Source: Paragordius varius (Eukaryota > Animalia > Nematomorpha). From it: a DNA stretch of 64,000 nucleotides. The notes under the pieces were generated by a model. The model was not told the DNA's origin. It saw only the letters and a program-made list of their open reading frames with translations, and did not search any database. Each line of letters begins with the position of its first letter. The first letter of the stretch is position 1. Of the stretch, positions 7,352-59,290 are shown one piece after another. Position numbers and translations under genes: made by a program. The stretch is taken from contig OZ176058.1 of the NCBI GenBank assembly GCA_964247055.1, positions 4,588,001 through 4,652,000 of the forward strand. The letters are read 5' to 3'.

Positions 7352-7599
7352 CAGAATAATTGAACTTATAAGGACAAAACGTGAAAATATAAAGAAATAT
7401 GTTTTTCTAAAAGACAACCATACTTTTTAATCATGATTTATTTCAATATATTACATATTACTGATACAATAAAATCTTTATTTTAAAGTAACTAAGTACT
7501 TATATGAGAAACATTAAGGTTTTAAAAAATATTGTCTTTTAGTAAAAAATATTTGTTCTTATATTTTTACGTTTTGTCCGTATAATTTCAATTTTATTG
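7352..7599. mobile_element. Family-A MITE, diverged
   Basis: Both arms recognisable (AAGGACAAAACGTGAAAATAT ... ATATTTTTACGTTTTGTCCGTATAATTTCAATTT), TA-flanked. Confidence 0.8.
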
Positions 7600-13800: not shown

Positions 13801-16800
13801 TCTAAAAAGATTTTCCAATTTTATTAAAAAAATCTATTTTTTTTTTCAAAAAAAAGTTAAAAAACCAATTTAAATTCTTTTTAAAAACGATATTATTTAT
13901 ATTACTTTAAATATTTTATTTTATTTTCAAAAATATCCATTTTTTTTAAAAATAATATCAATTTTTCTTAAAAAATTTCTTTAAAAAATTAATTTTTTTA
14001 TAATTCTAAAAAAGTTAAAAAACCAATATCAATTCCCCAATACAATATGTATTATAATTCTATAAAAGTTTTTTTTATAATTTTTAATAAAAACAATTTT
14101 TAAATCTTCAAAAAAATCTAATTTTTAAATTTTTTTTAATCTTAATTTTTCAAAAAATTCTAATTTTTTTTATAATTCTAAAAATTTAAAACCATTTTTT
14201 ATTTCCCTTAAAATCTATTTTTTTTAAAAATTATCCAATTTTAAATCCCTATAAAATCAAATTTTTTAAAATAATATCAATTTTTCTTAAGAAAAATTTC
14301 TTTAAAAAATTAATTTTTTTTATAATTCTAAAAAAATTAAAAAACCAATTTTAATTCCCCAATACAATATTCCTTCATCAGCTGTCTGGCATCAGCTGAG
14401 TGGCCAACATCTTCAAAATTATCTGTGGCGTCCATACCTATAAAAAATATAAATTATTAAAAATTAAAAAAATTTAAATTTATTAAAATAAAAAAAAATT
14501 ATTTAAAGTTCAAAAAATTAGAGAAAACAAAAAAATAAGAATAAAAATATAAATATATTTTAAAAGAGTTTCATCTATAAAAAAATCCTACAAAAAAAAT
14601 AATTGAATAAAATAAAAATTATTAAAAATTAAAAAAATGAAAATTTATTAAAAAAGTAAAAAAAATATTTAATAAAATATAAAATTATAAAAAAAAGTAA
14701 AAAAAATGAAAATTTATTAAAAAAAATATAGATATTTGTTTTTTAACGGCTTTTAACAACAAATATATGGCAAAAATAATTTATTTACAGTAAAAACTGA
14801 AATTATACGGACAAAACATAAACCTTTAAAGACAAATATTTTTTTCTAAAAGACAACCAACCATACTTTTTTATAAGCTATTTAGTTACAATCGTAAATT
14901 ATAAAATTGATTTTGTTAGTAATATATATATATATATATGTATATCTATATTTCATTTAGTTTATTTAAAAAGTATATATGTCTTTGAATATATCTTTAT
15001 ATTTTTACATTTTGTCCGTATAATTTCAATTTTTACTGTATAATAGGCGACACATATTTTTCTTAAACAAAAAAAAAACTAAGTTAAATTTTATAAAACT
15101 TCAATTCGTTTTAAATTAATTTATAAATGTTTTAAATTACAAATGAATGAACAAGCTATAAATTTTAAAAATTGGTGAATTCAATTATAAAAATTATAAA
15201 TTTTTATAATTATAAACAGTAAAATTTGGAATTATACGGATAATACGAAAAATATATCTAAAAGACAATTATACATTATCCAAAATATTCATTGTTTTAA
15301 AATATTGTATAATATAAAATCAATATGTGACACAATCAATTATATATAATGGTAATTATATGGTATATATATAAAAAAAATTTAAGGTTTATAAAAGTAT
15401 GGTTGTTGTTCTTTTAAAAAAAAATTTTGTCCGTATATTTTTACATTTTGTCTGTATCTTTTTACATTTTGTCTGTATCTTTTTACATTTTGTCAATAGT
15501 ATATTTTTACATTTTGTCCGTATCTTTTTACATTTTGTCAATAGTATATTTTTACATTTTGTCTGTATATTTTTACATTTTGTCAATAGTATCTTTTTAC
15601 ATTTTGTCAATAGTATATTTTTACATTTTGTCAATAGTATATTTTTACATTTTGTCAATAGTATATTTTTACATTTTGTCTGTATCTTTTTACATTTTGT
15701 CCGTATCTTTTTACATTTTGTCAATAGTATATTTTTACATTTTGTCAATTGTATATTTTTACATTTTGTCAATAGTATATTTTTACATTTTGTCCGTATA
15801 TTTTTACATTTTGTCAATAGTATATTTTTACATTTTGTCAATAGTATATTTTTACATTTTGTCTGTATCTTTTTACATTTTGTCAATAGTATATTTTTAC
15901 ATTTTGTCAATAGTATATTTTTACATTTTGTCAATAGTATATTTTTACATTTTGTCTGTATCTTTTTACATTTTGTCCGTATCTTTTTACATTTTGTCAA
16001 TAGTATATTTTTACATTTTGTCAATTGTATATTTTTACATTTTGTCAATAGTATATTTTTACATTTTGTCCGTATATTTTTACATTTTGTCAATAGTATA
16101 TTTTTACATTTTGTCAATAGTATATTTTTACATTTTGTCTGTATCTTTTTACATTTTGTCCGTATCTTTTTACATTTTGTCAATAGTATATTTTTACATT
16201 TTGTCTGTATCTTTTTACATTTTGTCCGTATCTTTTTACATTTTGTCTGTATCTTTTTACATTTTGTCTGTATCTTTTTACATTTTGTCTGTATCTTTTT
16301 ACATTTTGTCTGTATCTTTTTACATTTTGTCTGTATCTTTTTACATTTTGTCCGTATATTTTTATATTTTGTCTGTATCTTTTTACATTTTGTCTGTATC
16401 TTTTTACATTTTGTCTGTATCTTTTTACATTTTGTCTGTATCTTTTTACATTTTGTCTGTATCTTTTTACATTTTGTCTGTATCTTTTTACATTTTGTCT
16501 GTATCTTTTTACATTTTGTCTGTATCTTTTTACATTTTGTCTGTATCTTTTTACATTTTGTCTGTATCTTTTTACATTTTGTCTGTATCTTTTACATTTT
16601 GTCTGTATATTTTTACATTTTGTCCGTATATTTTTATATTTTGTCTGTATCTTTTTACATTTTGTCTGTATCTTTTTACATTTTGTCTGTATCTTTTTAC
16701 ATTTTGTCCGTATATTTTTATATTTTGTCTGTATCTTTTTACATTTTGTCTGTATCTTTTTACATTTTGTCTGTATCTTTTTACATTTTGTCTGTATCTT

Positions 16801-19800: not shown

Positions 19801-22800
19801 GTATATTTTTACATTTTGTCCGTATATTTTTACATTTTGTCAATAGTATCTTTTTACATTTTGTCCGTATATTCTTACATTTGTCTGTATCTTTTTACAT
19901 TTTGTCCGTATCTTTTTACATTTTGTCCGTATATTTTTACATTTTGTCCGTATTTTTACATTTTGTCTGTATATTTTTACATTTTGTCCGTATCTTTTTA
20001 CATTTTGTCCGTATATTTGATTTTGTCTGTATATTTTTACATTTTGTCTGTATATTTTTACATTTTGTCCGTATATTTTTACATTTTGTCCGTATCTTTT
20101 TACATTTTGTCCGTATATTTTTACATTTTGTCTGTATATTTTTACATTTTGTCCGTATATTTTTACATTTTGTCTGTATCTTTTTACATTTCGTCCGTAT
20201 CTTTTTACATTTTGTCCGTATCTTTTTACATTTTGTCCGTATCTTTTTACATTTTGTCCGTATATTTTTACATTTTGTCAATAGTATATTTTTACATTTT
20301 GTCCGTATATTTTTACATTTTGTCTGTATCTTTTTACATTTTGTCCGTATCTTTTTACATTTTGTCTGTATCTTTTTACATTTTGTCCGTATCTTTTTAC
20401 ATTTTGTCTGTATCTTTTTACATTTTGTCTGTATCTTTTTACATTTTGTCCGTATCTTTTTACATTTTGTCCGTATCTTTTTACATTTTGTCCGTATCTT
20501 TTTACATTTTGTCTGTCTATTTTTACATTTTGTCTGTATCTTTTTACATTTTGTCAATAGTATCTTTTTACATTTTGTCAATAGTATCTTTTTACATTTT
20601 GTCTGTATCTTTTTACATTTTGTCAATAGTATCTTTTTACATTTTGTCTGTATCTTTTTACATTTTGTCAATAGTATCTTTTTACATTTTGTCTGTATCT
20701 TTTTACATTTTGTCTGTATCTTTTTACATTTTGTCTGTATCTTTTTACATTTTGTCTGTATCTTTTTACATTTTGTCTGTATCTTTTAACATTTTGTCAA
20801 TAGTATATTTTTACATTTTGTCCGTATCTTTTTACATTTTGTCCGTATCTTTTTACATTTTGTCCGTATCTTTTTACATTTTGTCCGTATCTTTTTACAT
20901 TTTGTCCGTATCTTTTTACATTTTGTCCGTATCTTTTTACATTTTGTCCGTATCTTTTTACATTTTGTCCGTATCTTTTTACATTTTGTCTGTCTATTTT
21001 TACATTTTGTCTGTCTATTTTTACATTTTGTCTGTCTATTTTTACATTTTGTCTGTATCTTTTTACATTTTGTCAATAGTATCTTTTTACATTTTGTCTG
21101 TATCTTTTTACATTTTGTCAATAGTATCTTTTTACATTTTGTCAATAGTATCTTTTTACATTTTGTCAATAGTATATTTTTACATTTTGTCCGTATCTTT
21201 TTACATTTTGTCTGTATCTTTTTACATTTTGTCCGTATCTTTTTACATTTTGTCTGTATCTTTTTACATTTTGTCTGTATCTTTTTACATTTTGTCAATA
21301 GTATCTTTTTACATTTTGTCTGTATCTTTTTACATTTTGTCCGTATCTTTTTACATTTTGTCCGTATCTTTTTACATTTTGTCTGTCTATTTTTACATTT
21401 TGTCTGTCTATTTTTACATTTTGTCTGTATCTTTTTACATTTTGTCTGTATCTTTTTACATTTTGTCCGTATCTTTTTACATTTTGTCTGTATCTTTTTA
21501 CATTTTGTCCGTATCTTTTTACATTTTGTCCGTATCTTTTTACATTTTGTCCGTATCTTTTTACATTTTGTCCGTATCTTTTTACATTTTGTCCGTATCT
21601 TTTTACATTTTGTCAATAGTATCTTTTTACATTTTGTCGGTATCTTTTTACATTTTGTCCGTATCTTTTTACATTTTGTCCGTATCTTTTTACATTTTGT
21701 CCGTATCTTTTTACATTTTGTCTGTCTATTTTTACATTTTGTCTGTCTATTTTTACATTTTGTCTGTATCTTTTTACATTTTGTCAATAGTATCTTTTTA
21801 CATTTTGTCTGTATCTTTTTACATTTTGTCAATAGTATCTTTTTACATTTTGTCAATAGTATCTTTTTACATTTTGTCTGTATCTTTTTACATTTTGTCT
21901 GTATCTTTTTACATTTTGTCCGTATCTTTTTACATTTTGTCTGTATCTTTTTACATTTTGTCTGTATCTTTTTACATTTTGTCTGTATCTTTTTACATTT
22001 TGTCTGTATCTTTTTACATTTTGTCTGTATCTTTTTACATTTTGTCCGTATCTTTTTACATTTTGTCCGTATCTTTTTACATTTTGTCTGTCTATTTTTA
22101 CATTTTGTCTGTCTATTTTTACATTTTGTCTGTATCTTTTTACATTTTGTCTGTATCTTTTTACATTTTGTCCGTATCTTTTTACATTTTGTCCGTATCT
22201 TTTTACATTTTGTCCGTATCTTTTTACATTTTGTCCGTATCTTTTTACATTTTGTCCGTATCTTTTTACATTTTGTCCGTATCTTTTTACATTTTGTCCG
22301 TATCTTTTTACATTTTGTCCGTATCTTTTTACATTTTGTCCGTATCTTTTTACATTTTGTCTGTATCTTTTTACATTTTGTCCGTATATTTTTACATTTT
22401 GTCCGTATCTTTTTACATTTTGTCCGTATATTTTTACATTTTGTCCGTATCTTTTTACATTTTGTCCGTATCTTTTTACATTTTGTCCGTATCTTTTTAC
22501 ATTTTGTCCGTATCTTTTTACATTTTGTCCGTATCTTTTTTTTTGTCTGTATCTTTTGACATTTTGTCCGTATCTTTTTACATTTTGTCAATAGTATATT
22601 TTTACATTTTGTCCGTATCTTTTTACATTTTGTCAATAGTATATTTTTACATTTTGTCCGTATCTTTTTACATTTTTTCCGTATCTTTTTACATTTTGTC
22701 TGTATCTTTTTACATTTTGTCCGTATCTTTTTACATTTTGTCAATAGTATCTTTTTACATTTTGTCTGTATCTTTTTACATTTTGTCCGTATCTTTTTAC

Positions 22801-25800
22801 ATTTTGTCCGTATCTTTTTACATTTTGTCTGTATCTTTTTACATTTTGTCCGTATCTTTTTACATTTTGTCAATAGTATATTTTAACATTTTGTCCGTAT
22901 CTTTTTACATTTTGTCTGTATCTTTTTACATTTTGTCCGTATCTTTTTACATTTTGTCCGTATCTTTTTACATTTTGTCTGTATCTTTTTACATTTTGTC
23001 TGTATCTTTTTACATTTTGTCCGTATCTTTTTACATTTTGTCCGTATCTTTTTACATTTTGTCTGTATCTTTTTACATTTTGTCAATAGTATATTTTTAC
23101 ATTTTGTCCGTATCTTTTTACATTTTGTCTGTATCTTTTTACATTTTGTCAATAGTATCTTTTTACATTTTGTCCGTATCTTTTTACATTTTGTCTGTAT
23201 CTTTTTACATTTTGTCCGTATATTTTTACATTTTGTCCGTATCTTTTTACATTTTGTCTGTATCTTTTTACATTTTGTCAATAGTATCTTTTTACATTTT
23301 GTCCGTATCTTTTTACATTTTGTCTGTATCTTTTTACATTTTGTCCGTATCTTTTTACATTTTGTCCGTATATTTTTACATTTTGTCCGTATCTTTTTAC
23401 ATTTTGTCTGTATCTTTTTACATTTTGTCCGTATCTTTTTACATTTTGTCCGTATCTTTTTACACTTTGTCTGTATCTTTTTACATTTTGTCAATAGTAT
23501 CTTTTTACATTTTGTCTGTATCTTTTTACATTTTGTCAATAGTATCTTTTTACATTTTGTCCGTATCTTTTTACATTTTGTCTGTATCTTTTTACATTTT
23601 GTCTGTATCTTTTTACATTTTGTCCGTATCTTTTTACATTTTGTCTGTATCTTTTTACATTTTGTCAATAGTATATTTTTACATTTTGTCCGTATCTTTT
23701 TACATTTTGTCCGTATATTTTTACATTTTGTCCGTATCTTTTTACATTTTGTCTGTATCTTTTTACATTTTGTCAATAGTATATTTTTACATTTTGTCTG
23801 TATCTTTTTACATTTTGTCTGTATCTTTTTACATTTTGTCTGTATCTTTTTACATTTTGTCCGTATATTTTTACATTTTGTCCGTATCTTTTTACATTTT
23901 GTCCGTATCTTTTTACATTTTGTCTGTATCTTTTTACATTTTGTCCGTATATTTTTACATTTTGTCCGTATCTTTTTACATTTTGTCTGTATATTTTTAC
24001 ATTTTGTCCGTATATTTTTACATTTTGTCCGTATCTTTTTACATTTTGTCCGTATATTTTTACATTTTGTCTGTATATTTTTACATTTTGTCCGTATATT
24101 TTTACATTTTGTCTGTATCTTTTTACATTTCGTCCGTATCTTTTTACATTTTGTCCGTATCTTTTTACATTTTGTCCGTATATTTTTACATTTTGTCCGT
24201 ATTTTTACATTTTGTCTGTATATTTTTACATTTTGTCCGTATCTTTTTACATTTTGTCCGTATATTTGATTTTGTCTGTATATTTTTACATTTTGTCTGT
24301 ATATTTTTACATTTTGTCCGTATATTTTTACATTTTGTCCGTATCTTTTTACATTTTGTCCGTATATTTTTACATTTTGTCTGTATATTTTTACATTTTG
24401 TCCGTATATTTTTACATTTTGTCTGTATCTTTTTACATTTCGTCCGTATCTTTTTACATTTTGTCCGTATCTTTTTACATTTTGTCCGTATCTTTTTACA
24501 TTTTGTCCGTATATTTTTACATTTTGTCAATAGTATATTTTTACATTTTGTCCGTATATTTTTACATTTTGTCTGTATCTTTTTACATTTTGTCCGTATC
24601 TTTTTACATTTTGTCTGTATCTTTTTACATTTTGTCCGTATCTTTTTACATTTTGTCTGTATCTTTTTACATTTTGTCTGTATCTTTTTACATTTTGTCC
24701 GTATCTTTTTACATTTTGTCCGTATCTTTTTACATTTTGTCCGTATCTTTTTACATTTTGTCTGTCTATTTTTACATTTTGTCTGTATCTTTTTACATTT
24801 TGTCAATAGTATCTTTTTACATTTTGTCAATAGTATCTTTTTACATTTTGTCTGTATCTTTTTACATTTTGTCAATAGTATCTTTTTACATTTTGTCTGT
24901 ATCTTTTTACATTTTGTCAATAGTATCTTTTTACATTTTGTCTGTATCTTTTTACATTTTGTCTGTATCTTTTTACATTTTGTCTGTATCTTTTTACATT
25001 TTGTCTGTATCTTTTTACATTTTGTCTGTATCTTTTAACATTTTGTCAATAGTATATTTTTACATTTTGTCCGTATCTTTTTACATTTTGTCCGTATCTT
25101 TTTACATTTTGTCCGTATCTTTTTACATTTTGTCCGTATCTTTTTACATTTTGTCCGTATCTTTTTACATTTTGTCCGTATCTTTTTACATTTTGTCCGT
25201 ATCTTTTTACATTTTGTCCGTATCTTTTTACATTTTGTCTGTCTATTTTTACATTTTGTCTGTCTATTTTTACATTTTGTCTGTCTATTTTTACATTTTG
25301 TCTGTATCTTTTTACATTTTGTCAATAGTATCTTTTTACATTTTGTCTGTATCTTTTTACATTTTGTCAATAGTATCTTTTTACATTTTGTCAATAGTAT
25401 CTTTTTACATTTTGTCAATAGTATATTTTTACATTTTGTCCGTATCTTTTTACATTTTGTCTGTATCTTTTTACATTTTGTCCGTATCTTTTTACATTTT
25501 GTCTGTATCTTTTTACATTTTGTCTGTATCTTTTTACATTTTGTCAATAGTATCTTTTTACATTTTGTCTGTATCTTTTTACATTTTGTCCGTATCTTTT
25601 TACATTTTGTCCGTATCTTTTTACATTTTGTCTGTCTATTTTTACATTTTGTCTGTCTATTTTTACATTTTGTCTGTATCTTTTTACATTTTGTCTGTAT
25701 CTTTTTACATTTTGTCCGTATCTTTTTACATTTTGTCTGTATCTTTTTACATTTTGTCCGTATCTTTTTACATTTTGTCCGTATCTTTTTACATTTTGTC

Positions 25801-28800
25801 CGTATCTTTTTACATTTTGTCCGTATCTTTTTACATTTTGTCCGTATCTTTTTACATTTTGTCAATAGTATCTTTTTACATTTTGTCGGTATCTTTTTAC
25901 ATTTTGTCCGTATCTTTTTACATTTTGTCCGTATCTTTTTACATTTTGTCCGTATCTTTTTACATTTTGTCTGTCTATTTTTACATTTTGTCTGTCTATT
26001 TTTACATTTTGTCTGTATCTTTTTACATTTTGTCAATAGTATCTTTTTACATTTTGTCTGTATCTTTTTACATTTTGTCAATAGTATCTTTTTACATTTT
26101 GTCAATAGTATCTTTTTACATTTTGTCTGTATCTTTTTACATTTTGTCTGTATCTTTTTACATTTTGTCCGTATCTTTTTACATTTTGTCTGTATCTTTT
26201 TACATTTTGTCTGTATCTTTTTACATTTTGTCTGTATCTTTTTACATTTTGTCTGTATCTTTTTACATTTTGTCTGTATCTTTTTACATTTTGTCCGTAT
26301 CTTTTTACATTTTGTCCGTATCTTTTTACATTTTGTCTGTCTATTTTTACATTTTGTCTGTCTATTTTTACATTTTGTCTGTATCTTTTTACATTTTGTC
26401 TGTATCTTTTTACATTTTGTCCGTATCTTTTTACATTTTGTCCGTATCTTTTTACATTTTGTCCGTATCTTTTTACATTTTGTCCGTATCTTTTTACATT
26501 TTGTCCGTATCTTTTTACATTTTGTCCGTATCTTTTTACATTTTGTCCGTATCTTTTTACATTTTGTCCGTATCTTTTTACATTTTGTCCGTATCTTTTT
26601 ACATTTTGTCTGTATCTTTTTACATTTTGTCCGTATATTTTTACATTTTGTCCGTATCTTTTTACATTTTGTCCGTATATTTTTACATTTTGTCCGTATC
26701 TTTTTACATTTTGTCCGTATCTTTTTACATTTTGTCCGTATCTTTTTACATTTTGTCCGTATCTTTTTACATTTTGTCCGTATCTTTTTTTTTGTCTGTA
26801 TCTTTTGACATTTTGTCCGTATCTTTTTACATTTTGTCAATAGTATATTTTTACATTTTGTCCGTATCTTTTTACATTTTGTCAATAGTATATTTTTACA
26901 TTTTGTCCGTATCTTTTTACATTTTTTCCGTATCTTTTTACATTTTGTCTGTATCTTTTTACATTTTGTCCGTATCTTTTTACATTTTGTCAATAGTATC
27001 TTTTTACATTTTGTCTGTATCTTTTTACATTTTGTCCGTATCTTTTTACATTTTGTCCGTATCTTTTTACATTTTGTCTGTATCTTTTTACATTTTGTCC
27101 GTATCTTTTTACATTTTGTCAATAGTATATTTTAACATTTTGTCCGTATCTTTTTACATTTTGTCTGTATCTTTTTACATTTTGTCCGTATCTTTTTACA
27201 TTTTGTCCGTATCTTTTTACATTTTGTCTGTATCTTTTTACATTTTGTCTGTATCTTTTTACATTTTGTCCGTATCTTTTTACATTTTGTCCGTATCTTT
27301 TTACATTTTGTCTGTATCTTTTTACATTTTGTCAATAGTATATTTTTACATTTTGTCCGTATCTTTTTACATTTTGTCTGTATCTTTTTACATTTTGTCA
27401 ATAGTATCTTTTTACATTTTGTCCGTATCTTTTTACATTTTGTCTGTATCTTTTTACATTTTGTCCGTATATTTTTACATTTTGTCCGTATCTTTTTACA
27501 TTTTGTCTGTATCTTTTTACATTTTGTCAATAGTATCTTTTTACATTTTGTCCGTATCTTTTTACATTTTGTCTGTATCTTTTTACATTTTGTCCGTATC
27601 TTTTTACATTTTGTCCGTATATTTTTACATTTTGTCCGTATCTTTTTACATTTTGTCTGTATCTTTTTACATTTTGTCCGTATCTTTTTACATTTTGTCC
27701 GTATCTTTTTACACTTTGTCTGTATCTTTTTACATTTTGTCAATAGTATCTTTTTACATTTTGTCTGTATCTTTTTACATTTTGTCAATAGTATCTTTTT
27801 ACATTTTGTCCGTATCTTTTTACATTTTGTCTGTATCTTTTTACATTTTGTCTGTATCTTTTTACATTTTGTCCGTATCTTTTTACATTTTGTCTGTATC
27901 TTTTTACATTTTGTCAATAGTATATTTTTACATTTTGTCCGTATCTTTTTACATTTTGTCCGTATATTTTTACATTTTGTCCGTATCTTTTTACATTTTG
28001 TCTGTATCTTTTTACATTTTGTCAATAGTATATTTTTACATTTTGTCTGTATCTTTTTACATTTTGTCTGTATCTTTTTACATTTTGTCTGTATCTTTTT
28101 ACATTTTGTCCGTATATTTTTACATTTTGTCCGTATCTTTTTACATTTTGTCCGTATCTTTTTACATTTTGTCTGTATCTTTTTACATTTTGTCCGTATA
28201 TTTTTACATTTTGTCCGTATCTTTTTACATTTTGTCTGTATCTTTTTACATTTTGTCCGTATCTTTTTACATTTTGTCTGTATCTTTTTACATTTTGTCC
28301 GTATATTTTTACATTTTGTCCGTATCTTTTTACATTTTGTCTGTATCTTTTTACATTTTGTCAATAGTATCTTTTTACATTTTGTCTGTATCTTTTTACA
28401 TTTTGTCAATAGTATATTTTTACATTTTGTCCGTATCTTTTTACATTTTGTCTGTATCTTTTTACATTTTGTCCGTATCTTTTTACATTTTGTCCGTATC
28501 TTTTTACATTTTGTCCGTATCTTTTTACATTTTGTCAATAGTATCTTTTTACATTTTGTCCGTATCTTTTTACATTTTGTCCGTATCTTTTTACATTTTG
28601 TCTGTATCTTTTTACATTTTGTCTGTATCTTTTTACATTTTGTCAATAGTATCTTTTTACATTTTGTCTGTATCTTTTTACATTTTGTCCGTATCTTTTT
28701 ACATTTTGTCAATAGTATCTTTTTACATTTTGTCCGTATCTTTTTACATTTTGTCTGTATCTTTTTACATTTTGTCCGTATCTTTTTACATTTGTCCGTA

Positions 28801-31800
28801 TCTTTTTACATTTTGTCCGTATCTTTTTACATTTTGTCTGTATCTTTTTACATTTTGTCAATAGTATCTTTTTACATTTTGTCTGTATCTTTTTACATTT
28901 TGTCCGTATCTTTTTACATTTTGTCAATAGTATCTTTTTACATTTTGTCCGTATCTTTTTACATTTTGTCTGTATCTTTTTACATTTTGTCAATAGTATC
29001 TTTTTACATTTTGTCTGTATCTTTTTACATTTTGTCAATAGTATATTTTTACATTTTGTCCGTATCTTTTTACATTTTGTCTGTATCTTTTTACATTTTG
29101 TCCGTATCTTTTTACATTTTGTCCGTATCTTTTTACATTTTGTCCGTATCTTTTTACATTTTGTCAATAGTATCTTTTTACATTTTGTCCGTATCTTTTT
29201 ACATTTTGTCCGTATCTTTTTACATTTTGTCTGTATCTTTTTACATTTTGTCAATAGTATCTTTTTACATTTTGTCTGTATATTTTTACATTTTGTCCGT
29301 ATCTTTTTACATTTTGTCAATAGTATCTTTTTACATTTTGTCCGTATCTTTTTACATTTTGTCTGTATCTTTTTACATTTTGTCCGTATCTTTTTACATT
29401 TGTCCGTATCTTTTTACATTTTGTCCGTATCTTTTTACATTTTGTCTGTCTATTTTTACATTTTGTCTGTATCTTTTTACATTTTGTCAATAGTATCTTT
29501 TTACATTTTGTCTGTATCTTTTTACATTTTGTCAATAGTATCTTTTTACATTTTGTCAATAGTATCTTTTTACATTTTGTCTGTATCTTTTTACATTTTG
29601 TCAATAGTATCTTTTTACATTTTGTCTGTATCTTTTTACATTTTGTCTGTATCTTTTTACATTTTGTCTGTATCTTTTTACATTTTGTCTGTATCTTTTT
29701 ACATTTTGTCCGTATCTTTTTACATTTTGTCTGTATCTTTTTACATTTTGTCTGTATCTTTTTACATTTTGTCCGTATCTTTTTACATTTTGTCCGTATC
29801 TTTTTACATTTTGTCCGTATCTTTTTACATTTTGTCTGTATCTTTTTACATTTTGTCTGTATCTTTTTACATTTTGTCAATAGTATATTTTTACATTTTG
29901 TCTGTATCTTTTTACATTTTGTCCGTATCTTTTTACATTTTGTCCGTATCTTTTTACATTTTGTCCGTATCTTTTTACATTTTGTCCGTATCTTTTTACA
30001 TTTTGTCCGTATCTTTTTACATTTTGTCCGTATCTTTTTACATTTTGTCAATAGTATCTTTTTACATTTTGTCTGTATCTTTTTACATTTTGTCCGTATC
30101 TTTTTACATTTTGTCCGTATCTTTTTACATTTTGTCCGTATCTTTTTACATTTTGTCAATAGTATCTTTTTACATTTTGTCTGTATCTTTTTACATTTTG
30201 TCAATAGTATCTTTTTACATTTTGTCAATAGTATCTTTTTACATTTTGTCTGTATCTTTTTACATTTTGTCTGTATCTTTTTACATTTTGTCCGTATCTT
30301 TTTACATTTTGTCTGTATCTTTTTACATTTTGTCCGTATCTTTTTACATTTTGTCAATAGTATCTTTTTACATTTTGTCTGTATCTTTTTACATTTTGTC
30401 AATAGTATCTTTTTACATTTTGTCAATAGTATCTTTTTACATTTTGTCTGTATCTTTTTACATTTTGTCTGTATCTTTTTACATTTTGTCCGTATCTTTT
30501 TACATTTTGTCTGTATCTTTTTACATTTTGTCTGTATCTTTTTACATTTTGTCTGTATCTTTTTACATTTTGTCCGTATCTTTTTACATTTTGTCTGTAT
30601 CTTTTTACATTTTGTCCGTATCTTTTTACATTTTGTCTGTATCTTTTTACATTTTGTCCGTATCTTTTTACATTTGTCCGTATCTTTTTACATTTTGTCC
30701 GTATCTTTTTACATTTTGTCTGTATCTTTTTACATTTTGTCAATAGTATCTTTTTACATTTTGTCAATAGTATCTTTTTACATTTTGTCTGTATCTTTTT
30801 ACATTTTGTCTGTATCTTTTTACATTTTGTCCGTATCTTTTTACATTTTGTCTGTATCTTTTTACATTTTGTCCGTATCTTTTTACATTTTGTCCGTATC
30901 TTTTTACATTTGTCCGTATCTTTTTACATTTTGTCCGTATCTTTTTACATTTTGTCTGTATCTTTTTACATTTTGTCAATAGTATCTTTTTACATTTTGT
31001 CCGTATCTTTTTACATTTTGTCTGTATCTTTTTACATTTTGTCCGTATCTTTTTACATTTTGTCCGTATCTTTTTACATTTTGTCCGTATCTTTTTACAT
31101 TTGTCCGTATCTTTTTACATTTTGTCCGTATCTTTTTACATTTTGTCTGTATCTTTTTACATTTTGTCAATAGTATCTTTTTACATTTTGTCCGTATCTT
31201 TTTACATTTTGTCCGTATCTTTTTACATTTTGTCTGTATCTTTTTACATTTTGTCAATAGTATCTTTTTACATTTTGTCTGTATCTTTTTACATTTTGTC
31301 AATAGTATCTTTTTACATTTTGTCAATAGTATCTTTTTACATTTTGTCTGTATCTTTTTACATTTTGTCTGTATCTTTTTACATTTTGTCCGTATCTTTT
31401 TACATTTTGTCTGTATCTTTTTACATTTTGTCCGTATCTTTTTACATTTTGTCAATAGTATCTTTTTACATTTTGTCTGTATCTTTTTACATTTTGTCAA
31501 TAGTATCTTTTTACATTTTGTCAATAGTATCTTTTTACATTTTGTCTGTATCTTTTTACATTTTGTCAATAGTATATTTTTACATTTTGTCCGTATCTTT
31601 TTACATTTTGTCTGTATCTTTTTACATTTTGTCCGTATCTTTTTACATTTTGTCCGTATCTTTTTACATTTTGTCCGTATCTTTTTACATTTTGTCCGTA
31701 TCTTTTTACATTTTGTCAATAGTATCTTTTTACATTTTGTCCGTATCTTTTTACATTTTGTCCGTATCTTTTTACATTTTGTCTGTATCTTTTTACATTT

Positions 31801-34800
31801 TGTCAATAGTATCTTTTTACATTTTGTCTGTATATTTTTACATTTTGTCCGTATCTTTTTACATTTTGTCTGTATCTTTTTACATTTTGTCTGTATCTTT
31901 TTACATTTTGTCAATAGTATCTTTTTACATTTTGTCCGTATCTTTTTACATTTTGTCTGTATCTTTTTACATTTTGTCCGTATCTTTTTACATTTGTCCG
32001 TATCTTTTTACATTTTGTCCGTATCTTTTTACATTTTGTCTGTCTATTTTTACATTTTGTCTGTATCTTTTTACATTTTGTCAATAGTATCTTTTTACAT
32101 TTTGTCTGTATCTTTTTACATTTTGTCAATAGTATCTTTTTACATTTTGTCAATAGTATCTTTTTACATTTTGTCTGTATCTTTTTACATTTTGTCAATA
32201 GTATCTTTTTACATTTTGTCTGTATCTTTTTACATTTTGTCTGTATCTTTTTACATTTTGTCTGTATCTTTTTACATTTTGTCTGTATCTTTTTACATTT
32301 TGTCCGTATCTTTTTACATTTTGTCTGTATCTTTTTACATTTTGTCTGTATCTTTTTACATTTTGTCTGTATCTTTTTACATTTTGTCTGTATCTTTTTA
32401 CATTTTGTCCGTATCTTTTTACATTTTGTCCGTATCTTTTTACATTTTGTCTGTATCTTTTTACATTTTGTCAATAGTATATTTTTACATTTTGTCTGTA
32501 TCTTTTTACATTTTGTCCGTATCTTTTTACATTTTGTCCGTATCTTTTTACATTTTGTCTGTATCTTTTTACATTTTGTCTGTATCTTTTTACATTTTGT
32601 CAATAGTATATTTTTACATTTTGTCTGTATCTTTTTACATTTTGTCCGTATCTTTTTACATTTTGTCCGTATCTTTTTACATTTTGTCTGTATCTTTTTA
32701 CATTTTGTCTGTATCTTTTTACATTTTGTCAATAGTATATTTTTACATTTTGTCTGTATCTTTTTACATTTTGTCCGTATCTTTTTACATTTTGTCCGTA
32801 TCTTTTTACATTTTGTCTGTATCTTTTTACATTTTGTCTGTATCTTTTTACATTTTGTCAATAGTATCTTTTTACATTTTGTCTGTATCTTTTTACATTT
32901 TGTCTGTATCTTTTTACATTTTGTCCGTATCTTTTTACATTTTGTCTGTATCTTTTTACATTTTGTCCGTATCTTTTTACATTTTGTCAATAGTATCTTT
33001 TTACATTTTGTCTGTATCTTTTTACATTTTGTCAATAGTATCTTTTTACATTTTGTCAATAGTATCTTTTTACATTTTGTCTGTATCTTTTTACATTTTG
33101 TCAATAGTATATTTTTACATTTTGTCTGTATCTTTTTACATTTTGTCTGTATCTTTTTACATTTTGTCCGTATCTTTTTACATTTTGTCTGTATCTTTTT
33201 ACATTTTGTCTGTATCTTTTTACATTTTGTCAATAGTATATTTTTACATTTTGTCTGTATCTTTTTACATTTTGTCCGTATCTTTTTACATTTTGTCCGT
33301 ATCTTTTTACATTTTGTCCGTATCTTTTTACATTTTGTCCGTATCTTTTTACATTTTGTCCGTATCTTTTTACATTTTGTCAATAGTATCTTTTTACATT
33401 TTGTCTGTATCTTTTTACATTTTGTCCGTATCTTTTTACATTTTGTCCGTATCTTTTTACATTTTGTCCGTATCTTTTTACATTTTGTCAATAGTATCTT
33501 TTTACATTTTGTCTGTATCTTTTTACATTTTGTCAATAGTATCTTTTTACATTTTGTCAATAGTATCTTTTTACATTTTGTCTGTATCTTTTTACATTTT
33601 GTCTGTATCTTTTTACATTTTGTCCGTATCTTTTTACATTTTGTCTGTATCTTTTTACATTTTGTCCGTATCTTTTTACATTTTGTCAATAGTATCTTTT
33701 TACATTTTGTCTGTATCTTTTTACATTTTGTCAATAGTATCTTTTTACATTTTGTCAATAGTATCTTTTTACATTTTGTCTGTATCTTTTTACATTTTGT
33801 CTGTATCTTTTTACATTTTGTCCGTATCTTTTTACATTTTGTCTGTATCTTTTTACATTTTGTCTGTATCTTTTTACATTTTGTCTGTATCTTTTTACAT
33901 TTTGTCCGTATCTTTTTACATTTTGTCTGTATCTTTTTACATTTTGTCCGTATCTTTTTACATTTTGTCTGTATCTTTTTACATTTTGTCCGTATCTTTT
34001 TACATTTGTCCGTATCTTTTTACATTTTGTCCGTATCTTTTTACATTTTGTCTGTATCTTTTTACATTTTGTCAATAGTATCTTTTTACATTTTGTCAAT
34101 AGTATCTTTTTACATTTTGTCTGTATCTTTTTACATTTTGTCTGTATCTTTTTACATTTTGTCCGTATCTTTTTACATTTTGTCTGTATCTTTTTACATT
34201 TTGTCCGTATCTTTTTACATTTTGTCCGTATCTTTTTACATTTGTCCGTATCTTTTTACATTTTGTCCGTATCTTTTTACATTTTGTCTGTATCTTTTTA
34301 CATTTTGTCAATAGTATCTTTTTACATTTTGTCCGTATCTTTTTACATTTTGTCTGTATCTTTTTACATTTTGTCCGTATCTTTTTACATTTTGTCCGTA
34401 TCTTTTTACATTTTGTCCGTATCTTTTTACATTTGTCCGTATCTTTTTACATTTTGTCCGTATCTTTTTACATTTTGTCTGTATCTTTTTACATTTTGTC
34501 AATAGTATCTTTTTACATTTTGTCCGTATCTTTTTACATTTTGTCCGTATCTTTTTACATTTTGTCTGTATCTTTTTACATTTTGTCAATAGTATCTTTT
34601 TACATTTTGTCTGTATCTTTTTACATTTTGTCAATAGTATCTTTTTACATTTTGTCAATAGTATCTTTTTACATTTTGTCTGTATCTTTTTACATTTTGT
34701 CTGTATCTTTTTACATTTTGTCCGTATCTTTTTACATTTTGTCTGTATCTTTTTACATTTTGTCCGTATCTTTTTACATTTTGTCAATAGTATCTTTTTA

Positions 34801-37800
34801 CATTTTGTCTGTATCTTTTTACATTTTGTCAATAGTATCTTTTTACATTTTGTCAATAGTATCTTTTTACATTTTGTCTGTATCTTTTTACATTTTGTCA
34901 ATAGTATATTTTTACATTTTGTCCGTATCTTTTTACATTTTGTCTGTATCTTTTTACATTTTGTCCGTATCTTTTTACATTTTGTCCGTATCTTTTTACA
35001 TTTTGTCCGTATCTTTTTACATTTTGTCCGTATCTTTTTACATTTTGTCAATAGTATCTTTTTACATTTTGTCCGTATCTTTTTACATTTTGTCCGTATC
35101 TTTTTACATTTTGTCTGTATCTTTTTACATTTTGTCAATAGTATCTTTTTACATTTTGTCTGTATATTTTTACATTTTGTCCGTATCTTTTTACATTTTG
35201 TCTGTATCTTTTTACATTTTGTCTGTATCTTTTTACATTTTGTCAATAGTATCTTTTTACATTTTGTCCGTATCTTTTTACATTTTGTCTGTATCTTTTT
35301 ACATTTTGTCCGTATCTTTTTACATTTGTCCGTATCTTTTTACATTTTGTCCGTATCTTTTTACATTTTGTCTGTCTATTTTTACATTTTGTCTGTATCT
35401 TTTTACATTTTGTCAATAGTATCTTTTTACATTTTGTCTGTATCTTTTTACATTTTGTCAATAGTATCTTTTTACATTTTGTCAATAGTATCTTTTTACA
35501 TTTTGTCTGTATCTTTTTACATTTTGTCAATAGTATCTTTTTACATTTTGTCTGTATCTTTTTACATTTTGTCTGTATCTTTTTACATTTTGTCTGTATC
35601 TTTTTACATTTTGTCTGTATCTTTTTACATTTTGTCCGTATCTTTTTACATTTTGTCTGTATCTTTTTACATTTTGTCTGTATCTTTTTACATTTTGTCT
35701 GTATCTTTTTACATTTTGTCTGTATCTTTTTACATTTTGTCCGTATCTTTTTACATTTTGTCCGTATCTTTTTACATTTTGTCTGTATCTTTTTACATTT
35801 TGTCAATAGTATATTTTTACATTTTGTCTGTATCTTTTTACATTTTGTCCGTATCTTTTTACATTTTGTCCGTATCTTTTTACATTTTGTCTGTATCTTT
35901 TTACATTTTGTCTGTATCTTTTTACATTTTGTCAATAGTATATTTTTACATTTTGTCTGTATCTTTTTACATTTTGTCCGTATCTTTTTACATTTTGTCC
36001 GTATCTTTTTACATTTTGTCTGTATCTTTTTACATTTTGTCTGTATCTTTTTACATTTTGTCAATAGTATATTTTTACATTTTGTCTGTATCTTTTTACA
36101 TTTTGTCCGTATCTTTTTACATTTTGTCCGTATCTTTTTACATTTTGTCTGTATCTTTTTACATTTTGTCTGTATCTTTTTACATTTTGTCAATAGTATA
36201 TTTTTACATTTTGTCTGTATCTTTTTACATTTTGTCTGTATCTTTTTACATTTTGTCCGTATCTTTTTACATTTTGTCTGTATCTTTTTACATTTTGTCT
36301 GTATCTTTTTACATTTTGTCAATAGTATATTTTTACATTTTGTCTGTATCTTTTTACATTTTGTCCGTATCTTTTTACATTTTGTCCGTATCTTTTTACA
36401 TTTTGTCCGTATCTTTTTACATTTTGTCTGTATCTTTTTACATTTTGTCTGTATCTTTTTACATTTTGTCAATAGTATATTTTTACATTTTGTCTGTATC
36501 TTTTTACATTTTGTCCGTATCTTTTTACATTTTGTCCGTATCTTTTTACATTTTGTCCGTATCTTTTTACATTTTGTCCGTATCTTTTTACATTTTGTCC
36601 GTATCTTTTTACATTTTGTCCGTATCTTTTTACATTTTGTCAGTATCTTTTTACATTTTGTCTGTATCTTTTTACATTTTGTCCGTATCTTTTTACATTT
36701 TGTCAATAGTATCTTTTTACATTTTGTCCGTATCTTTTTACATTTTGTCAATAGTATCTTTTTACATTTTGTCTGTATCTTTTTACATTTTGTCTGTATC
36801 TTTTTACATTTTGTCAATAGTATCTTTTTACATTTTGTCAATAGTATCTTTTTACATTTTGTCTGTATCTTTTTACATTTTGTCCGTATCTTTTTACATT
36901 TTGTCCGTATCTTTTTACATTTTGTCTGTATCTTTTTACATTTTGTCCGTATCTTTTTACATTTTGTCAATAGTATCTTTTTACATTTTGTCAATATCTT
37001 TTTACATTTTGTCAATAGTATCTTTTTACATTTTGTCAATAGTATCTTTTTACATTTTGTCTGTATCTTTTTACATTTTGTCCGTATCTTTTTACATTTT
37101 GTCTGTATCTTTTTACATTTTGTCTGTATCTTTTTACATTTTGTCTGTATCTTTTTACATTTTGTCCGTATCTTTTTACATTTTGTCTGTATCTTTTTAC
37201 ATTTTGTCTGTATCTTTTTACATTTTGTCTGTATCTTTTTACATTTTGTCCGTATCTTTTTACATTTTGTCTGTATCTTTTTACATTTTGTCTGTATCTT
37301 TTTACATTTTGTCAATAGTATATTTTTACATTTTGTCTGTATCTTTTTACATTTTGTCCGTATCTTTTTACATTTTGTCCGTATCTTTTTACATTTTGTC
37401 CGTATCTTTTTACATTTTGTCTGTATCTTTTTACATTTTGTCTGTATCTTTTTACATTTTGTCAATAGTATATTTTTACATTTTGTCTGTATCTTTTTAC
37501 ATTTTGTCCGTATCTTTTTACATTTTGTCCGTATCTTTTTACATTTTGTCCGTATCTTTTTACATTTTGTCCGTATCTTTTTACATTTTGTCCGTATCTT
37601 TTTACATTTTGTCTGTATCTTTTTACATTTTGTCCGTATATTTTTACATTTTGTCCGTATCTTTTTACATTTTGTCCGTATCTTTTTACATTTTGTCCGT
37701 ATCTTTTTACATTTTGTCAATAGTATCTTTTTACATTTTGTCCGTATCTTTTTACATTTTGTCCGTATCTTTTTACATTTTGTCTGTATCTTTTTACATT

Positions 37801-52800: not shown

Positions 52801-54102
52801 TACATTTTGTCAATAGTATATTTTTACATTTTGTCTGTATCTTTTTACATTTTGTCAATAGTATATTTTTACATTTTGTCTGTATATTTTTACATTTGTC
52901 CGTATATTTTTACACTTTGTCTGTATATTTTTACATTTGTCCGTATATTTTTACACTTTGTCTGTATATTTTTACATTTTGTCCGTATCTTTTTACATTT
53001 TGTCCGTATATTTTTACATTTTGTCTGTATCTTTTTACATTTTGTCTGTATCTTTTTACATTTTGTCAATAGTATATTTTTACATTTTGTCCGTATCTTT
53101 TTAATTTCAATTTTTTACTGTGATATTAACTTGTATATAATAAAAAGTGTAAATGGAAAATTAATGTCAAACAGACAAATTGTTATAATAGGCGACAACA
53201 TATTTTTTATAAAAACAGATAAAAACTAAACCATAGTATAAAAACATCAATTCTTTTTTTTCCATTAAACAAAAATTGTTTTAAATCATTTATATCAAAT
53301 ATCAACCATCAAACTGTGATATTATTTAGAAAATCTTAAGAAGGTTTAAAAAAAAGGGTATGGTTTTTATATGAAAAAAATAATTTTCTTTTTTACAGTA
53401 AAAAAAAAGTTTTTTATCATAATTTTTATGGGAAAGGCTTTAAAGTTCAAAGGATTACAACAAATCTAAATAATACTGAAAAAAAAACTATTTTAATAAT
53501 TATTTTTTTATTTTATTACAATATATATAAATTCCAAAGATTTAGAAAATGTATTATTTATTCAGAAAATTTTAGTTTTAATTTTTTAATTTTAATTGAA
53601 AAATTAATAAAGTGTTCAAATATATTTTGTAAGCGGAAACAGTTGTATAATTTTATGTATAATAAAAAAAGTTTATTTACGTTTTTAATTATTCAATCAC
53701 ATATTTCCGTAAAATTTTGGAATAATGGGCTTTAATTTATTTAAACTGATTATATTAATTTTTTATAAAAACTCTAAGTTGATTTAAAAAATTAACATTT
53801 ATTAATTTCAATGCCTTACATTTTTAAAATAAACTATAAAAAATAAAACTCCTATTTATGTAAAAAACCTGCAGATTCTATCAGAACTTCTTCGCCGCCA
53901 GGATGCTAAAAAAGGCTTTATGTAAAATTTATACTTCCTCTTTAAATTTGGTCACATCATAAATTTTATCATGAATTAAAAGCCATAACGAGTCTTCTGT
54001 GTTGTGACTTTCGAATTCTTGCCTTGAAAAATATTTTATAGCATTTTCGTGACTTTCGTTTGAATTTTCCTCTAACTTGGAATGTGATGCTATTTCAACC
54101 AT
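9145..54102 (-). CDS. CYB5: Cytochrome b5, tail-anchored, 157 aa, 474-bp CDS in five exons; join 54102-53935, 53905-53869, 14437-14346, 10584-10517, 9253-9145
   Basis: Spliced translation: [157 protein letters not shown]. Both haem-ligand motifs (HPGG, FEDVGHS) and a C-terminal hydrophobic anchor are present. All four introns are GT-AG with matching phases (0,1,0,2). Confidence 0.93.
9314..9600. mobile_element. Family-A MITE (287 bp) in cytochrome b5 intron 4
   Basis: TA|CAGTAAAAATT ... AAATTTACTG|TA with GACAA subrepeats in both arms. Confidence 0.88.
10058..10380. mobile_element. Family-D MITE with 21-bp subrepeats in its TIRs
   Basis: TA|CCATTTACAGTTCAAATTCACCC ... GGTGAATTTGAACTGTAAATGG|TA; unit CAATTCAAATTCACCCTTGAA occurs 4 times in the left arm and 3 times in the right. 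Confidence 0.85.
10517..10584 (-). CDS. CYB5: Cytochrome b5 exon 4, linker (68 bp)
   Basis: ATATAG acceptor, phase 0; [22 protein letters not shown]; donor AA|GTAAAT; phases fit both neighbouring exons. Confidence 0.8.
11068..11380. mobile_element. Family-A MITE (313 bp) in cytochrome b5 intron 3
   Basis: TA|CAGTAAAAATTGAA ... TTCAATTTTTACTG|TA. Confidence 0.88.
11700..14345. repeat. Degenerate repeat tract built on AAAACCAATTTTAATTCCC (cytochrome b5 exon 3 end plus donor)
   Basis: More than 20 copies by eye (e.g. 12381, 12746, 12931, 13421, 13591, 13738, 14019); a block of about 240 bp is repeated at a 362-bp offset (12181 vs 12543). Confidence 0.8.
14346..14437 (-). CDS. CYB5: Cytochrome b5 exon 3 (92 bp)
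   Basis: TTTATAG acceptor; [30 protein letters not shown]; donor TTG|GTTTTT; an isolated GC-richer island. Confidence 0.95.
14788..15038. mobile_element. Family-A Tc1/mariner-type MITE (251 bp)
   Basis: TA|CAGTAAAAACTGAAATTATACGGACAAAA ... TTTTGTCCGTATAATTTCAATTTTTACTG|TA; TIRs of about 80-90 bp; the right TIR contains an exact satellite monomer. Confidence 0.9.
15217..53120. mobile_element. Family-A MITE whose right TIR contains the satellite (host element)
   Basis: Left TIR CAGTAAAATTTGGAATTATACGGA at 15217. The internal part matches other family-A copies. The right TIR starts AAAAGTATGGTTG (about 15393), runs into the array and resumes after it as TTAATTTCAATTTTTTACTG (53101-53120). The flanking TA dinucleotides are not intact (AA / TG). 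Confidence 0.85.
15425..53102. repeat. Tandem satellite, about 37.7 kb; 21-bp monomer TTTTTACATTTTGTC(T/C)GTAT(C/A) plus a 24-bp variant TTTTTACATTTTGTCAATAGTAT(C/A); roughly 1,700-1,800 monomers estimated from length
   Basis: Continuous head-to-tail monomers with no unique spacers, plus variant domains and higher-order duplications. Confidence 0.99.
53869..53905 (-). CDS. CYB5: Cytochrome b5 exon 2 (37 bp)
   Basis: TTTTAG acceptor; [13 protein letters not shown]; donor CAG|GTTTTT. Confidence 0.95.
53906..53934 (-). other. 29-bp intron 1 of cytochrome b5
   Basis: GTATAAATTTTACATAAAGCCTTTTTTAG; its removal restores KFKEE-HPGG, and read-through hits TAA. Confidence 0.92.
53935..54102 (-). CDS. 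CYB5: Cytochrome b5 exon 1 (168 bp)
   Basis: ATG at 54102-54100; [17 protein letters not shown]; donor GAA|GTATAA. Confidence 0.93.
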
Positions 54103-54962: not shown

Positions 54963-55049
54963 CTATATATCGACATAGAAAGATAGTTGATGTATATTTA
55001 TCTATCACTTTAAGATTAAATTACCTTAATATTTTTAAAATCTATAGCA

Positions 55050-59013: not shown

Positions 59014-59290
59014 CAGTACAAATTGAAATCAAACTGACAAAACGTAAAAATATAAGGACAAATATTTTTTTTAAAAGATAACCATATTCACCTTAATTTT
59101 TCTCATATAAGCCATTTAGTAAATTGTATAATATAAAATTAATTGTTAGTATATATAACTCTATTTTACACTATGCCATTTAAAACAATGACTTGTAGAT
59201 ATAAATCTAGATTTAAAAGTATGGTTTGTCTTTTAGTAAAAAATATTTGTCTTTATATTTATATGTTTGAACGCATATCAGTTTTTACTG
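59014..59290. mobile_element. Family-A MITE (277 bp)
   Basis: CAGTACAAATTGAAATC...GACAAAACGTAAAAATATAAGGACAAATATT left arm; AAAAGTATGGTTTGTCTTTTAG...TTTTTACTG|TA right arm; absent from the paralogous block. Confidence 0.85.

What the first reader, a model, noticed from the sequence alone, without database searches (positions are those of the whole stretch)
15217..53120. Satellite birth caught in place: the array is an expansion of one subrepeat inside a MITE terminal inverted repeat
Seen: intact family-A MITEs end with AAAAGTATGGTTGTCTTTT..ATTTGTCTTTATATTTTTAC(A/G)TTTTGTCCGTATAATTTCAATTTTTACTG. The array is preceded by the first part of this string (about 15393-15424) and followed by its last part (53101-53120). 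The element's left TIR and internal sequence lie just upstream (15217-15390). The TIR already has TTTGTCnnTATA twice, 21 bp apart, and the neighbouring copy (15001-15022) contains an exact monomer. Inference: slippage or unequal exchange between these TIR subrepeats (probably transposase-binding sites) turned an element of about 280 bp into one of 37.9 kb.
Basis: partly seen in the sequence, partly recalled or inferred. Interest (0 to 1): 0.9.

Follow-up and report, generated by a model that had tools for sequence, protein, structure and literature searches.

The report
Transposon end expanded into 38-kb satellite
A 21-letter stretch in one end of a small, old cut-and-paste transposon has been copied about 1,750 times where it sits, making a 37.7-kb satellite inside an intron of a cytochrome b5 gene; it is a very clean example of a known way that satellite DNA arises.

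Summary
A 37.7-kb array of about 1,750 units of 21 or 24 bp (15424-53107) sits inside the right arm of one copy of a Tc1/mariner-type MITE (15217-53120). At least six unexpanded sister copies lie in the same window.

Every arm of the family carries three T(T/G)GTC motifs about 21 bp apart. One out-of-register exchange between the outer two predicts exactly the first unit of the array.

The host copy is as old as its sisters, about 20% from the family consensus. The units differ by only 5%, almost all at two sites. Two kb-sized blocks are tandem duplicates at 99.6-99.7%, so the array kept growing at this locus.

Word depth in reads of the source organism fits this array being a third to all of the satellite in that genome. 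Satellite words in runs labelled with other organisms copy this array's own junction profile at about 0.05-0.15x. They look like trace DNA of the same organism, not an older shared satellite.

The array makes intron 2 of a cytochrome b5 gene 39,431 nt long, while intron 1 is 29 nt.

TE-end-derived satellites are already known (Tetris, miDNA4, Xstir). The scan's first readers noted other MITE-to-satellite cases on other DNA of this genome; I did not check them. Verdict: real, well supported, a new member of a known kind.

The parts
15217..15290 (+). Left arm of the expanded MITE. It starts with a CAGT tip, and the middle motif has been removed by a deletion of about 17 bp.
   Evidence: Alignments; arm list.
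15291..15392 (+). Internal sequence of the expanded MITE. It has the same orientation as copy 9314(+) and the opposite orientation to 11068 and 14788.
   Evidence: BLAST E 2e-20; orientation z-scores 4-6.
15393..15423 (+). Inner part of the right arm, holding the inner TTGT motif and an A-run.
15424..15444 (+). First unit of the array. It equals the predicted founder unit: the 5' half of the outer motif joined to the tail of the middle motif.
   Evidence: Printed. The same 21-mer occurs 76 times in the array.
15424..53107 (+). Satellite array of about 1,750 units of 21 or 24 bp, organised in domains.
19875..28346 (+). Tandem duplicate of a 4.2-kb block inside the array (19875-24097 and 24124-28346), 99.7% identical.
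29900..36370 (+). Tandem duplicate of a 3.1-kb block inside the array (29900-33038 and 33232-36370), 99.6% identical.
53108..53120 (+). Outer tip of the right arm, ending in ACTG. Both haplotype contigs of run X2 reach it.
   Evidence: table 8, records 1 and 2.
14788..15038 (+). Neighbouring intact family copy with TA on both sides. It holds 25 nt of the periodic unit string at 14998-15022.
9314..9600 (+). Unexpanded sister copy with TA flanks.
11068..11380 (+). Unexpanded sister copy with TA flanks.
59014..59290 (+). Unexpanded sister copy.
6971..7231 (+). Truncated sister copy. Its arm has GTCCATAGTAT, a 3-bp insertion like that of the 24-bp array unit.
7353..7597 (+). Unexpanded sister copy.
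53869..54102 (-). Cytochrome b5 exon 1 (54102-53935), a 29-nt intron 1, and exon 2 (53905-53869). The donor of intron 2 is at 53868.
   Evidence: Pfam Cyt-b5 E 1.7e-8.
14346..14437 (-). Cytochrome b5 exon 3. Intron 2 (53868 to 14438, 39,431 nt) contains the whole expanded element.
   Evidence: Pfam Cyt-b5 E 1.9e-6.

Best explanation
An old, non-autonomous Tc1/mariner-type element of about 270 bp sits in intron 2 of a cytochrome b5 gene. Each of its arms carries three T(T/G)GTC motifs spaced about 21 bp apart, so the arm is already a degenerate three-unit tandem. These motifs are probably binding sites for the family's transposase.

In the right arm, an out-of-register (21-bp) exchange or replication slip between the middle and outer motifs made a hybrid 21-bp unit. 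Unequal exchange then multiplied that unit to about 1,750 copies. Derived variants spread along the way (A to C in the unit, CG to TG, a 3-bp insertion), and blocks of several kb were duplicated.

The element's two tips and its internal sequence stayed in place, so the satellite still lies inside a recognisable transposon.

Shown: the anatomy, the homology, the exact founder unit, the block duplications, and that the array is younger or more homogenised than its host. Inferred: the molecular process (slippage, unequal sister-chromatid exchange, or slipped repair after a cut at the nearby tip) and the binding-site role.
For: - Array and units.
- Both edges and the interior align to the family.
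- Three motifs lie 27-31, 47-52 and 68-76 nt from the tip in 12 arms.
- Outer-motif head plus middle-motif tail gives the exact first unit at 15424-15444. The neighbouring copy holds 25 nt of the periodic string.
- The ancestral A-form is kept at both edges: map.
- The host copy is 20% from the consensus, like its sisters at 14-21%. The units differ by 5%, almost all at two sites.
- Tandem blocks of 4.2 kb and 3.1 kb are 99.6-99.7% identical.
- The left arm of the same element lost its middle motif, so the subrepeats are unstable both ways.
- Read-word depth in the array is about 2.6 times (range 0.5-8.5) what the window's array alone predicts.
- A second MITE family in the window has arms built of 3-4 tandem 21-bp units, so this architecture is usual here.
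Against: - The right junction is not exact. It has 6 extra nt, or equivalently 15 nt of the outer motif are missing.
- The flanks are AA and TG instead of TA and TA, so no clean target duplication ties the two ends together.
- The 24-bp unit resembles a 3-bp-insertion variant seen in the arm of another copy (6971). This could mean input from other copies.
- No other copy in the window shows an intermediate number of units.
- Satellite words occur in runs labelled with eight other organisms.
- An empty or unexpanded orthologous site was not seen.
Confidence: 0.75

Rival explanations
1. The element already carried a multi-unit 21-bp array in its arm when it inserted, because the family or its master has tandem-repeat arms. 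On this reading only the later growth happened here, not the birth.
For: Unchecked first-reader notes describe DD34E Tc1/mariner elements in this genome whose arms are arrays of 21-bp repeats. The window itself holds a MITE with 4 and 3 tandem 21-bp units in its arms. A variant like the 24-bp unit exists in the arm of another copy.
Against: All six sister copies with this internal sequence have one unit per motif. The repeat-armed MITE in the window has a different unit sequence. The left arm of the expanded element has two motifs, not an array. The first unit is the exact one-step recombinant.
Confidence: 0.13
2. The satellite is older and more widespread than the MITE. The MITE either inserted beside it or picked up a unit from it.
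For: Satellite 31-mers are found in runs labelled with eight other organisms, while the unique flank is found only in organisms A and B. Contigs of 38-61 nt identical to the array occur in runs X6 and X7.
Against: The unit sequence is an integral part of both inverted arms of every family copy, and those copies are 14-21% diverged, so they are older than the homogeneous array. The array is bracketed by the parts of one arm in the correct order. In X6 and X7 the contig depths follow the multiplicity of the same junctions in this very array, at about 0.03-0.16 per copy. Another high-copy repeat of the window also appears there at trace level, though at 3-7 times lower relative depth than the array. 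This fits trace DNA of the same organism. Total satellite in genome A is at most about 2.6 times this array. Two metagenome scans were blank.
Confidence: 0.07
3. The array, or its length and block structure, is an assembly artefact.
For: Arrays of short repeats and near-identical kb-sized blocks are hard to assemble. No read spanning either junction was seen, because only 31-mer contigs were available.
Against: Word depth in run X2 is 70-680 times the unique depth across the array bins. That is at least as much satellite as was assembled. Both haplotype contigs reach the right tip at 53110. Run X3, filed under another organism label, has near-identical flanks (2 mismatches in 843 nt) and also holds the satellite at comparable relative depth.
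Confidence: 0.04

Closest known systems
Tetris / TIR-220 of Drosophila virilis (Dias et al. 2014, PMC4079207)
   Same: Tandem repeats that are part of a DNA transposon's terminal inverted repeats served as building blocks for kb-size satellite arrays. A related MITE (DAIBAM) shares the arm tips.
   Different: The Tetris unit is about 220 bp and the element is foldback-like, with repeats in both arms and many rearranged forms. Here the unit is 21 bp. One arm of a single short Tc1/mariner MITE copy is expanded 1,750-fold and the other arm is not.
miDNA4, a Tc1/mariner MITE of Xenopus tropicalis carrying a satellite (Scalvenzi and Pollet 2014, as summarised in PMC12628747)
   Same: A Tc1/mariner MITE with a unit present once or as arrays of variable length. 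Microhomology-driven expansion is proposed, with loss of the ends expected later.
   Different: In miDNA4 the repeat is internal, and its authors propose that the MITE captured a pre-existing repeat. Here the unit is the arm's own subrepeat, and the founder recombinant can be read at the edge of the array.
Xstir MITE and tandem arrays in Xenopus (Hikosaka and Kawahara 2004, as summarised in PMC12628747)
   Same: MITE, tandem array and composite MITE-array structures coexist, and the tandem units derive from MITE sequence.
   Different: The Xstir model joins neighbouring elements through a stem-loop, and the units are whole-element-derived. Here a 21-bp piece of one arm is amplified.
Foldback-type elements and Tc1/mariner elements with repeated binding sites in their arms (established knowledge)
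   Same: The arms contain several direct repeats at regular spacing. The window's other MITE (10063-10376) shows 3-4 tandem 21-bp units per arm.
   Different: Those arms hold a few to tens of units and are symmetric. This case is asymmetric and three orders of magnitude larger.

Membership tests
Tc1/mariner-type MITE (Stowaway-like) | TA target-site duplication | tested here: met
   TA lies on both sides of copies 9314, 11068 and 14788, and on at least one side of 6971, 7353 and 59014. The expanded copy itself has AA and TG.
Tc1/mariner-type MITE (Stowaway-like) | Terminal inverted repeats with 5'-CAGT tips | tested here: met
   The arms are about 75 nt.
Tc1/mariner-type MITE (Stowaway-like) | Short, non-coding and multi-copy | tested here: met
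   The copies are 245-313 bp, and at least seven lie in 64 kb. Loose ends made of inner-arm sequence in the reads show further copies (table 7).
Tc1/mariner-type MITE (Stowaway-like) | An autonomous partner with a DD34E/D transposase and the same arm tips | not testable with these tools
   There is no transposase in the window, and the rest of the genome cannot be read. Earlier notes mention DD34E elements but give no sequence.
Satellite DNA | Long head-to-tail array of near-identical units | tested here: met
   37.7 kb and about 1,750 units; 5% pairwise difference among the 21-mers.
Satellite DNA | Higher-order or domain structure produced by unequal exchange | tested here: met
   Domain map; tandem blocks of 4.2 and 3.1 kb at 99.6-99.7%.
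Satellite DNA | Several arrays, or a heterochromatic or centromeric location | tested here: inconclusive
   Word depth allows between 1 and about 2.6 times this array genome-wide. The chromosomal position is unknown. This array is intronic.
TE-derived satellite (Tetris / miDNA4 kind) | The unit is homologous to part of the element, and the array lies inside an element whose ends are kept | tested here: met
TE-derived satellite (Tetris / miDNA4 kind) | Copies with intermediate unit numbers, and arrays that have lost the element's ends | tested here: not met
   None of the six other copies in the window has more than one unit per motif. The genome-wide census could not be run.

The most novel reading that the evidence does not exclude
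The 21-bp unit is the transposase's binding site. The 1,750-unit array is then not just debris. It would be either a decoy that soaks up the family's transposase, or the product of a TE-end-triggered amplification process that recurs in this genome. Several other MITE-to-satellite and Helitron-to-satellite cases were noted by the scan. If so, this animal would be a natural system in which the first steps of satellite formation can be watched at many loci. It would also show how a gene with 29-nt introns copes with a 39-kb intron full of GTAAAA motifs.
Probability: 0.15. Interest if true: 0.75.

Novelty: new member of a known kind. Interest (0 to 1): 0.45.

Why it matters
How satellites start is usually reconstructed after the traces are gone. 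Here all the landmarks survive in one 38-kb stretch:
- both transposon tips;
- the internal sequence;
- the unexpanded opposite arm;
- unexpanded sister copies a few hundred bp away;
- the exact one-step founder unit at the array's edge;
- recent kb-scale block duplications.

That makes it a good teaching and test case for the slippage-then-unequal-exchange model. It also puts 1,750 copies of a probable transposase-binding site, each with a splice-donor-like GTAAAA on the sense strand, inside an intron of a housekeeping gene in a genome whose neighbouring intron is 29 nt. Effects on splicing, transcription and transposase titration are therefore directly testable. The principle itself is already established.

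Tried and rejected
1. Two exact-pattern scans of metagenome contigs, one for the unit junction and one for the outer arm, found nothing.

2. I searched protein space with a translation of the array, hoping to reach other arrays through called ORFs. None of 8,000 candidates scored.

3. The look-up of earlier findings by sequence was blank.

4. I considered that the neighbouring copy and the expanded copy are tandem segmental duplicates. The reason was that the sequence after each is similar (15039-15137 against 53184-53286, 75%, E 6e-12). I rejected this because their internal sequences run in opposite orientations. The similar flanks are best read as two old related elements. One (14760-14787 plus 15039-15216) is split by the neighbouring copy. 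The other (about 53147-53397) is whole.

5. I considered that the satellite is shared by other species. The contigs from X6 and X7 reproduce this array's own junction types, with depth following their multiplicity here. No unique flank or exon is laid in those runs. I therefore read them as trace DNA of the same or a near-identical organism. This is not proven.

6. I considered that the 21-bp-array-armed DD34E elements of the earlier notes are the partner. The one such element I could read (10063-10376) has an unrelated unit.

Full report
**What is there**

TRF finds one array at 15424-53107 with period 21, 1746 copies and 91% matches. Splitting it gives about 1,757 units. The main forms are:
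- a 21-mer with GTCCGTATC, about 610 units;
- its CG-to-TG form, about 550 units;
- a 24-bp form with GTCAATAGTAT, about 340 units;
- the A-form with ...GTATATTTTTAC, about 170 units.

Among the 1,202 units of 21 nt the mean pairwise difference is 5%. Nearly all of it falls at two positions, C/T in the CpG and C/A. The other 19 positions are at least 96% invariant.

**The family**

A search with the arm tip and BLAST with four copies find these family members in the window (sequences):
- 6971-7231 (truncated)
- 7353-7597
- 8330-8411 (fragment)
- 9314-9600
- 11068-11380
- 14788-15038
- 59014-59290

They are 245-313 bp and non-coding. They start with CAGT, end with ACTG, and are mostly flanked by TA. 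These are the marks of Tc1/mariner-type MITEs.

Each copy is 14-21% from a leave-one-out consensus, so the family is old. When 12 arms are written in one orientation, each shows three T(T/G)GTC motifs at about 27-31, 47-52 and 68-76 nt from the tip. The arm is therefore already a degenerate three-unit tandem with a period of about 21 bp. A regular spacing of two helical turns suggests repeated protein-binding sites, but that is inference.

**The expanded copy**

Positions 15217-15423 align with the family over the left arm, the internal sequence and the inner right arm (E down to 2e-20; alignments). Positions 53073-53120 align with the outer right arm (E 1e-9).

With the array collapsed to one unit, the element is 20% from the consensus, the same as its sisters. 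Its internal sequence has the orientation of 9314(+) and is opposite to 11068 and 14788. It is therefore an independent insertion, not a local duplicate of its neighbour.

Its left arm has lost the middle motif through a deletion of about 17 bp. The subrepeats of this one element therefore changed in number in both directions.

**The edges**

In the family, the middle motif ends ...TATATTTTTAC and the outer motif begins ATTTTGTCCGTATA. An exchange 21 bp out of register at the shared TATA gives ATTTTGTCCGTATATTTTTAC.

That is exactly the first unit of the array (15424-15444, printed), and it occurs 76 times in all. The neighbouring intact copy holds 25 nt of this periodic string (14998-15022). 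Outside the array only a 17-nt piece at 8353 also matches it. A-form units are present at both edges (map).

Three things are imperfect:
- The position of the middle motif in this copy reads like an array unit.
- The right junction has six extra nt (CTTTTT) before AATTTCAATTTTTTACTG.
- The flanks are AA and TG, not TA and TA.

**Growth in place**

The array has domains, for example a nearly pure TG-form stretch from about 16.3 to 19.5 kb. Two tandem block duplications stand out:
- 19875-24097 against 24124-28346, 4.2 kb, 99.7% identical;
- 29900-33038 against 33232-36370, 3.1 kb, 99.6% identical.

These are what unequal exchange produces. They are far younger than the host element.

**Is the satellite elsewhere?**

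*In the source organism.* In run X2 of organism A, unique flank contigs have a word depth of about 285. The eight array bins have depths of 20,000-194,000. Compared with the multiplicity of the same 31-mers in the window, observed over expected is 0.5-8.5, with a mean of about 2.6. Depths of overlapping near-identical contigs are summed, so this is an upper bound. The array in the window is therefore a third to all of the satellite in that genome. Both haplotype contigs of X2 reach the right tip at 53110.

*In organism B.* Run X3 has flank contigs with 2 mismatches in 843 nt at a depth of 2-3, and array bins near 200. It is a near-identical genome with a comparable array.

*In other organisms.* Satellite words also occur in runs labelled with organisms C to I, at shares of 0.31 down to 0.06. 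The right flank was found only in A and B.
- In X6 and X7 only 33 and 25 short contigs were laid, and about half of them are at least 99% identical.
- Nothing real was laid on the flank or on the cytochrome b5 exons.
- The depths of those contigs follow the multiplicity of the same junction types in this array. In X7, for example, depth 34 goes with a junction present about 490 times, and depths 8-12 go with junctions present 55-82 times.
- Another high-copy repeat of the window (55027-55300) appears in the same runs at trace level, though at 3-7 times lower relative depth than the array.

A distant species with its own old satellite would not reproduce this array's junction profile. I read these signals as about 0.05-0.15x of organism-A-like DNA in those runs, from carry-over or co-occurrence. 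This is likely but not proven. Two metagenome scans were blank.

**Direction of descent**

The unit sequence sits once, in inverted orientation, in both arms of every diverged family copy. The array units are far more alike than the copies are. The array is also bracketed by the two halves of one arm in the right order. All of this argues that the arm gave rise to the satellite, not the reverse.

**Context**

The minus strand carries a cytochrome b5 gene:
- exon 1 at 54102-53935;
- a 29-nt intron;
- exon 2 at 53905-53869 (HPGG...);
- exon 3 at 14437-14346 (...[12 protein letters not shown]).

Pfam Cyt-b5 matches profile positions 2-30 in exon 1 and 46-74 in exon 3. Intron 2 is therefore 39,431 nt, of which 37,904 nt are the expanded element. 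On the sense strand each unit reads GTAAAAAGATAC(G/A)GACAAAAT, which has a donor-like GTAAAA. The TG-form also has a CAG. Whether splicing is affected could not be tested.

**Related architecture**

The window holds another TA-flanked, CAGT-tipped MITE (10063-10376). Its arms consist of 4 and 3 tandem 21-bp units of unrelated sequence. Unchecked first-reader notes describe DD34E elements in this genome with 21-bp-array arms, and at least four other MITE-to-satellite cases on other DNA of this genome. Arms built of 21-bp repeats, and their expansion, seem to be a habit of this genome's Tc1/mariner elements. This favours the mechanism but lowers the uniqueness of the case.

**Comparison with the known**

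Satellites built from transposon arms or from repeats inside MITEs are established. Examples are Tetris/TIR-220 (PMC4079207) and miDNA4 and Xstir, as reviewed in PMC12628747.

This case differs in four ways:
- a very short unit;
- expansion of one arm only;
- intact landmarks, including the exact founder unit;
- an intronic position.

It is a new member of a known kind.

**Confidence**

| Reading | Confidence |
|---|---|
| In-place expansion of the arm subrepeat | 0.75 |
| Arm already multi-unit at insertion | 0.13 |
| Older, widespread satellite | 0.07 |
| Assembly artefact | 0.04 |

Noticed in passing
window 14346-54102 (minus strand): Cytochrome b5 gene whose intron 1 is 29 nt and whose intron 2 is 39,431 nt. 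Intron 2 is almost wholly the expanded MITE. Each array unit carries a donor-like GTAAAA on the sense strand.
   Followed up: partly
window 10063-10376: Second MITE family with TA flanks and CAGT...ACTG tips. Its arms are 4 and 3 tandem 21-bp units (ACAATTCAAATTCACCCTTAA type), unrelated in sequence to the satellite unit. It sits inside a fragment of the first family (about 9917-10050).
   Followed up: partly
window 55027-55300: Very high-copy repeat, at 70-880 times the unique depth in run X2. Many contigs skip 77-156 nt inside it, so the genome holds numerous internally deleted copies.
   Followed up: no
window 14760-14787 + 15039-15216 and 53147-53397: Two old, related MITE-like elements (75% identical over 104 nt, E 6e-12) flank the expanded element as direct repeats. 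The left one is split by the intact neighbouring copy. Exchange between them could delete the whole array.
   Followed up: partly
window 6971-7010: The arm of this copy has GTCCATAGTAT, a 3-bp insertion one substitution away from the 24-bp array unit (GTCAATAGTAT). Whether this is independent recurrence or exchange between copies and the array is unexplained.
   Followed up: no
window 53110-53290 and 53914-54110: Run X2 holds two haplotype contigs right of the array. One has 4 substitutions and 13 gap letters in 177 nt, and there are further paired variants near the cytochrome b5 exon 1. The individual is heterozygous here, but both haplotypes carry the element's right tip.
   Followed up: no
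window 8421-8596: Another short inverted-repeat element (it starts CAGTAAACATTGGTTGCTTATTTCACAC and has a matching inverted end). It appears to be nested in the family copy that starts at 8330.
   Followed up: no
window 15424-53107: At the unit's CpG, C and T are almost equally common (610 against 577 of the 21-mers), while G-to-A at the same CpG is nearly absent (2). One TG founder variant was amplified rather than many independent deaminations occurring.
   Followed up: partly
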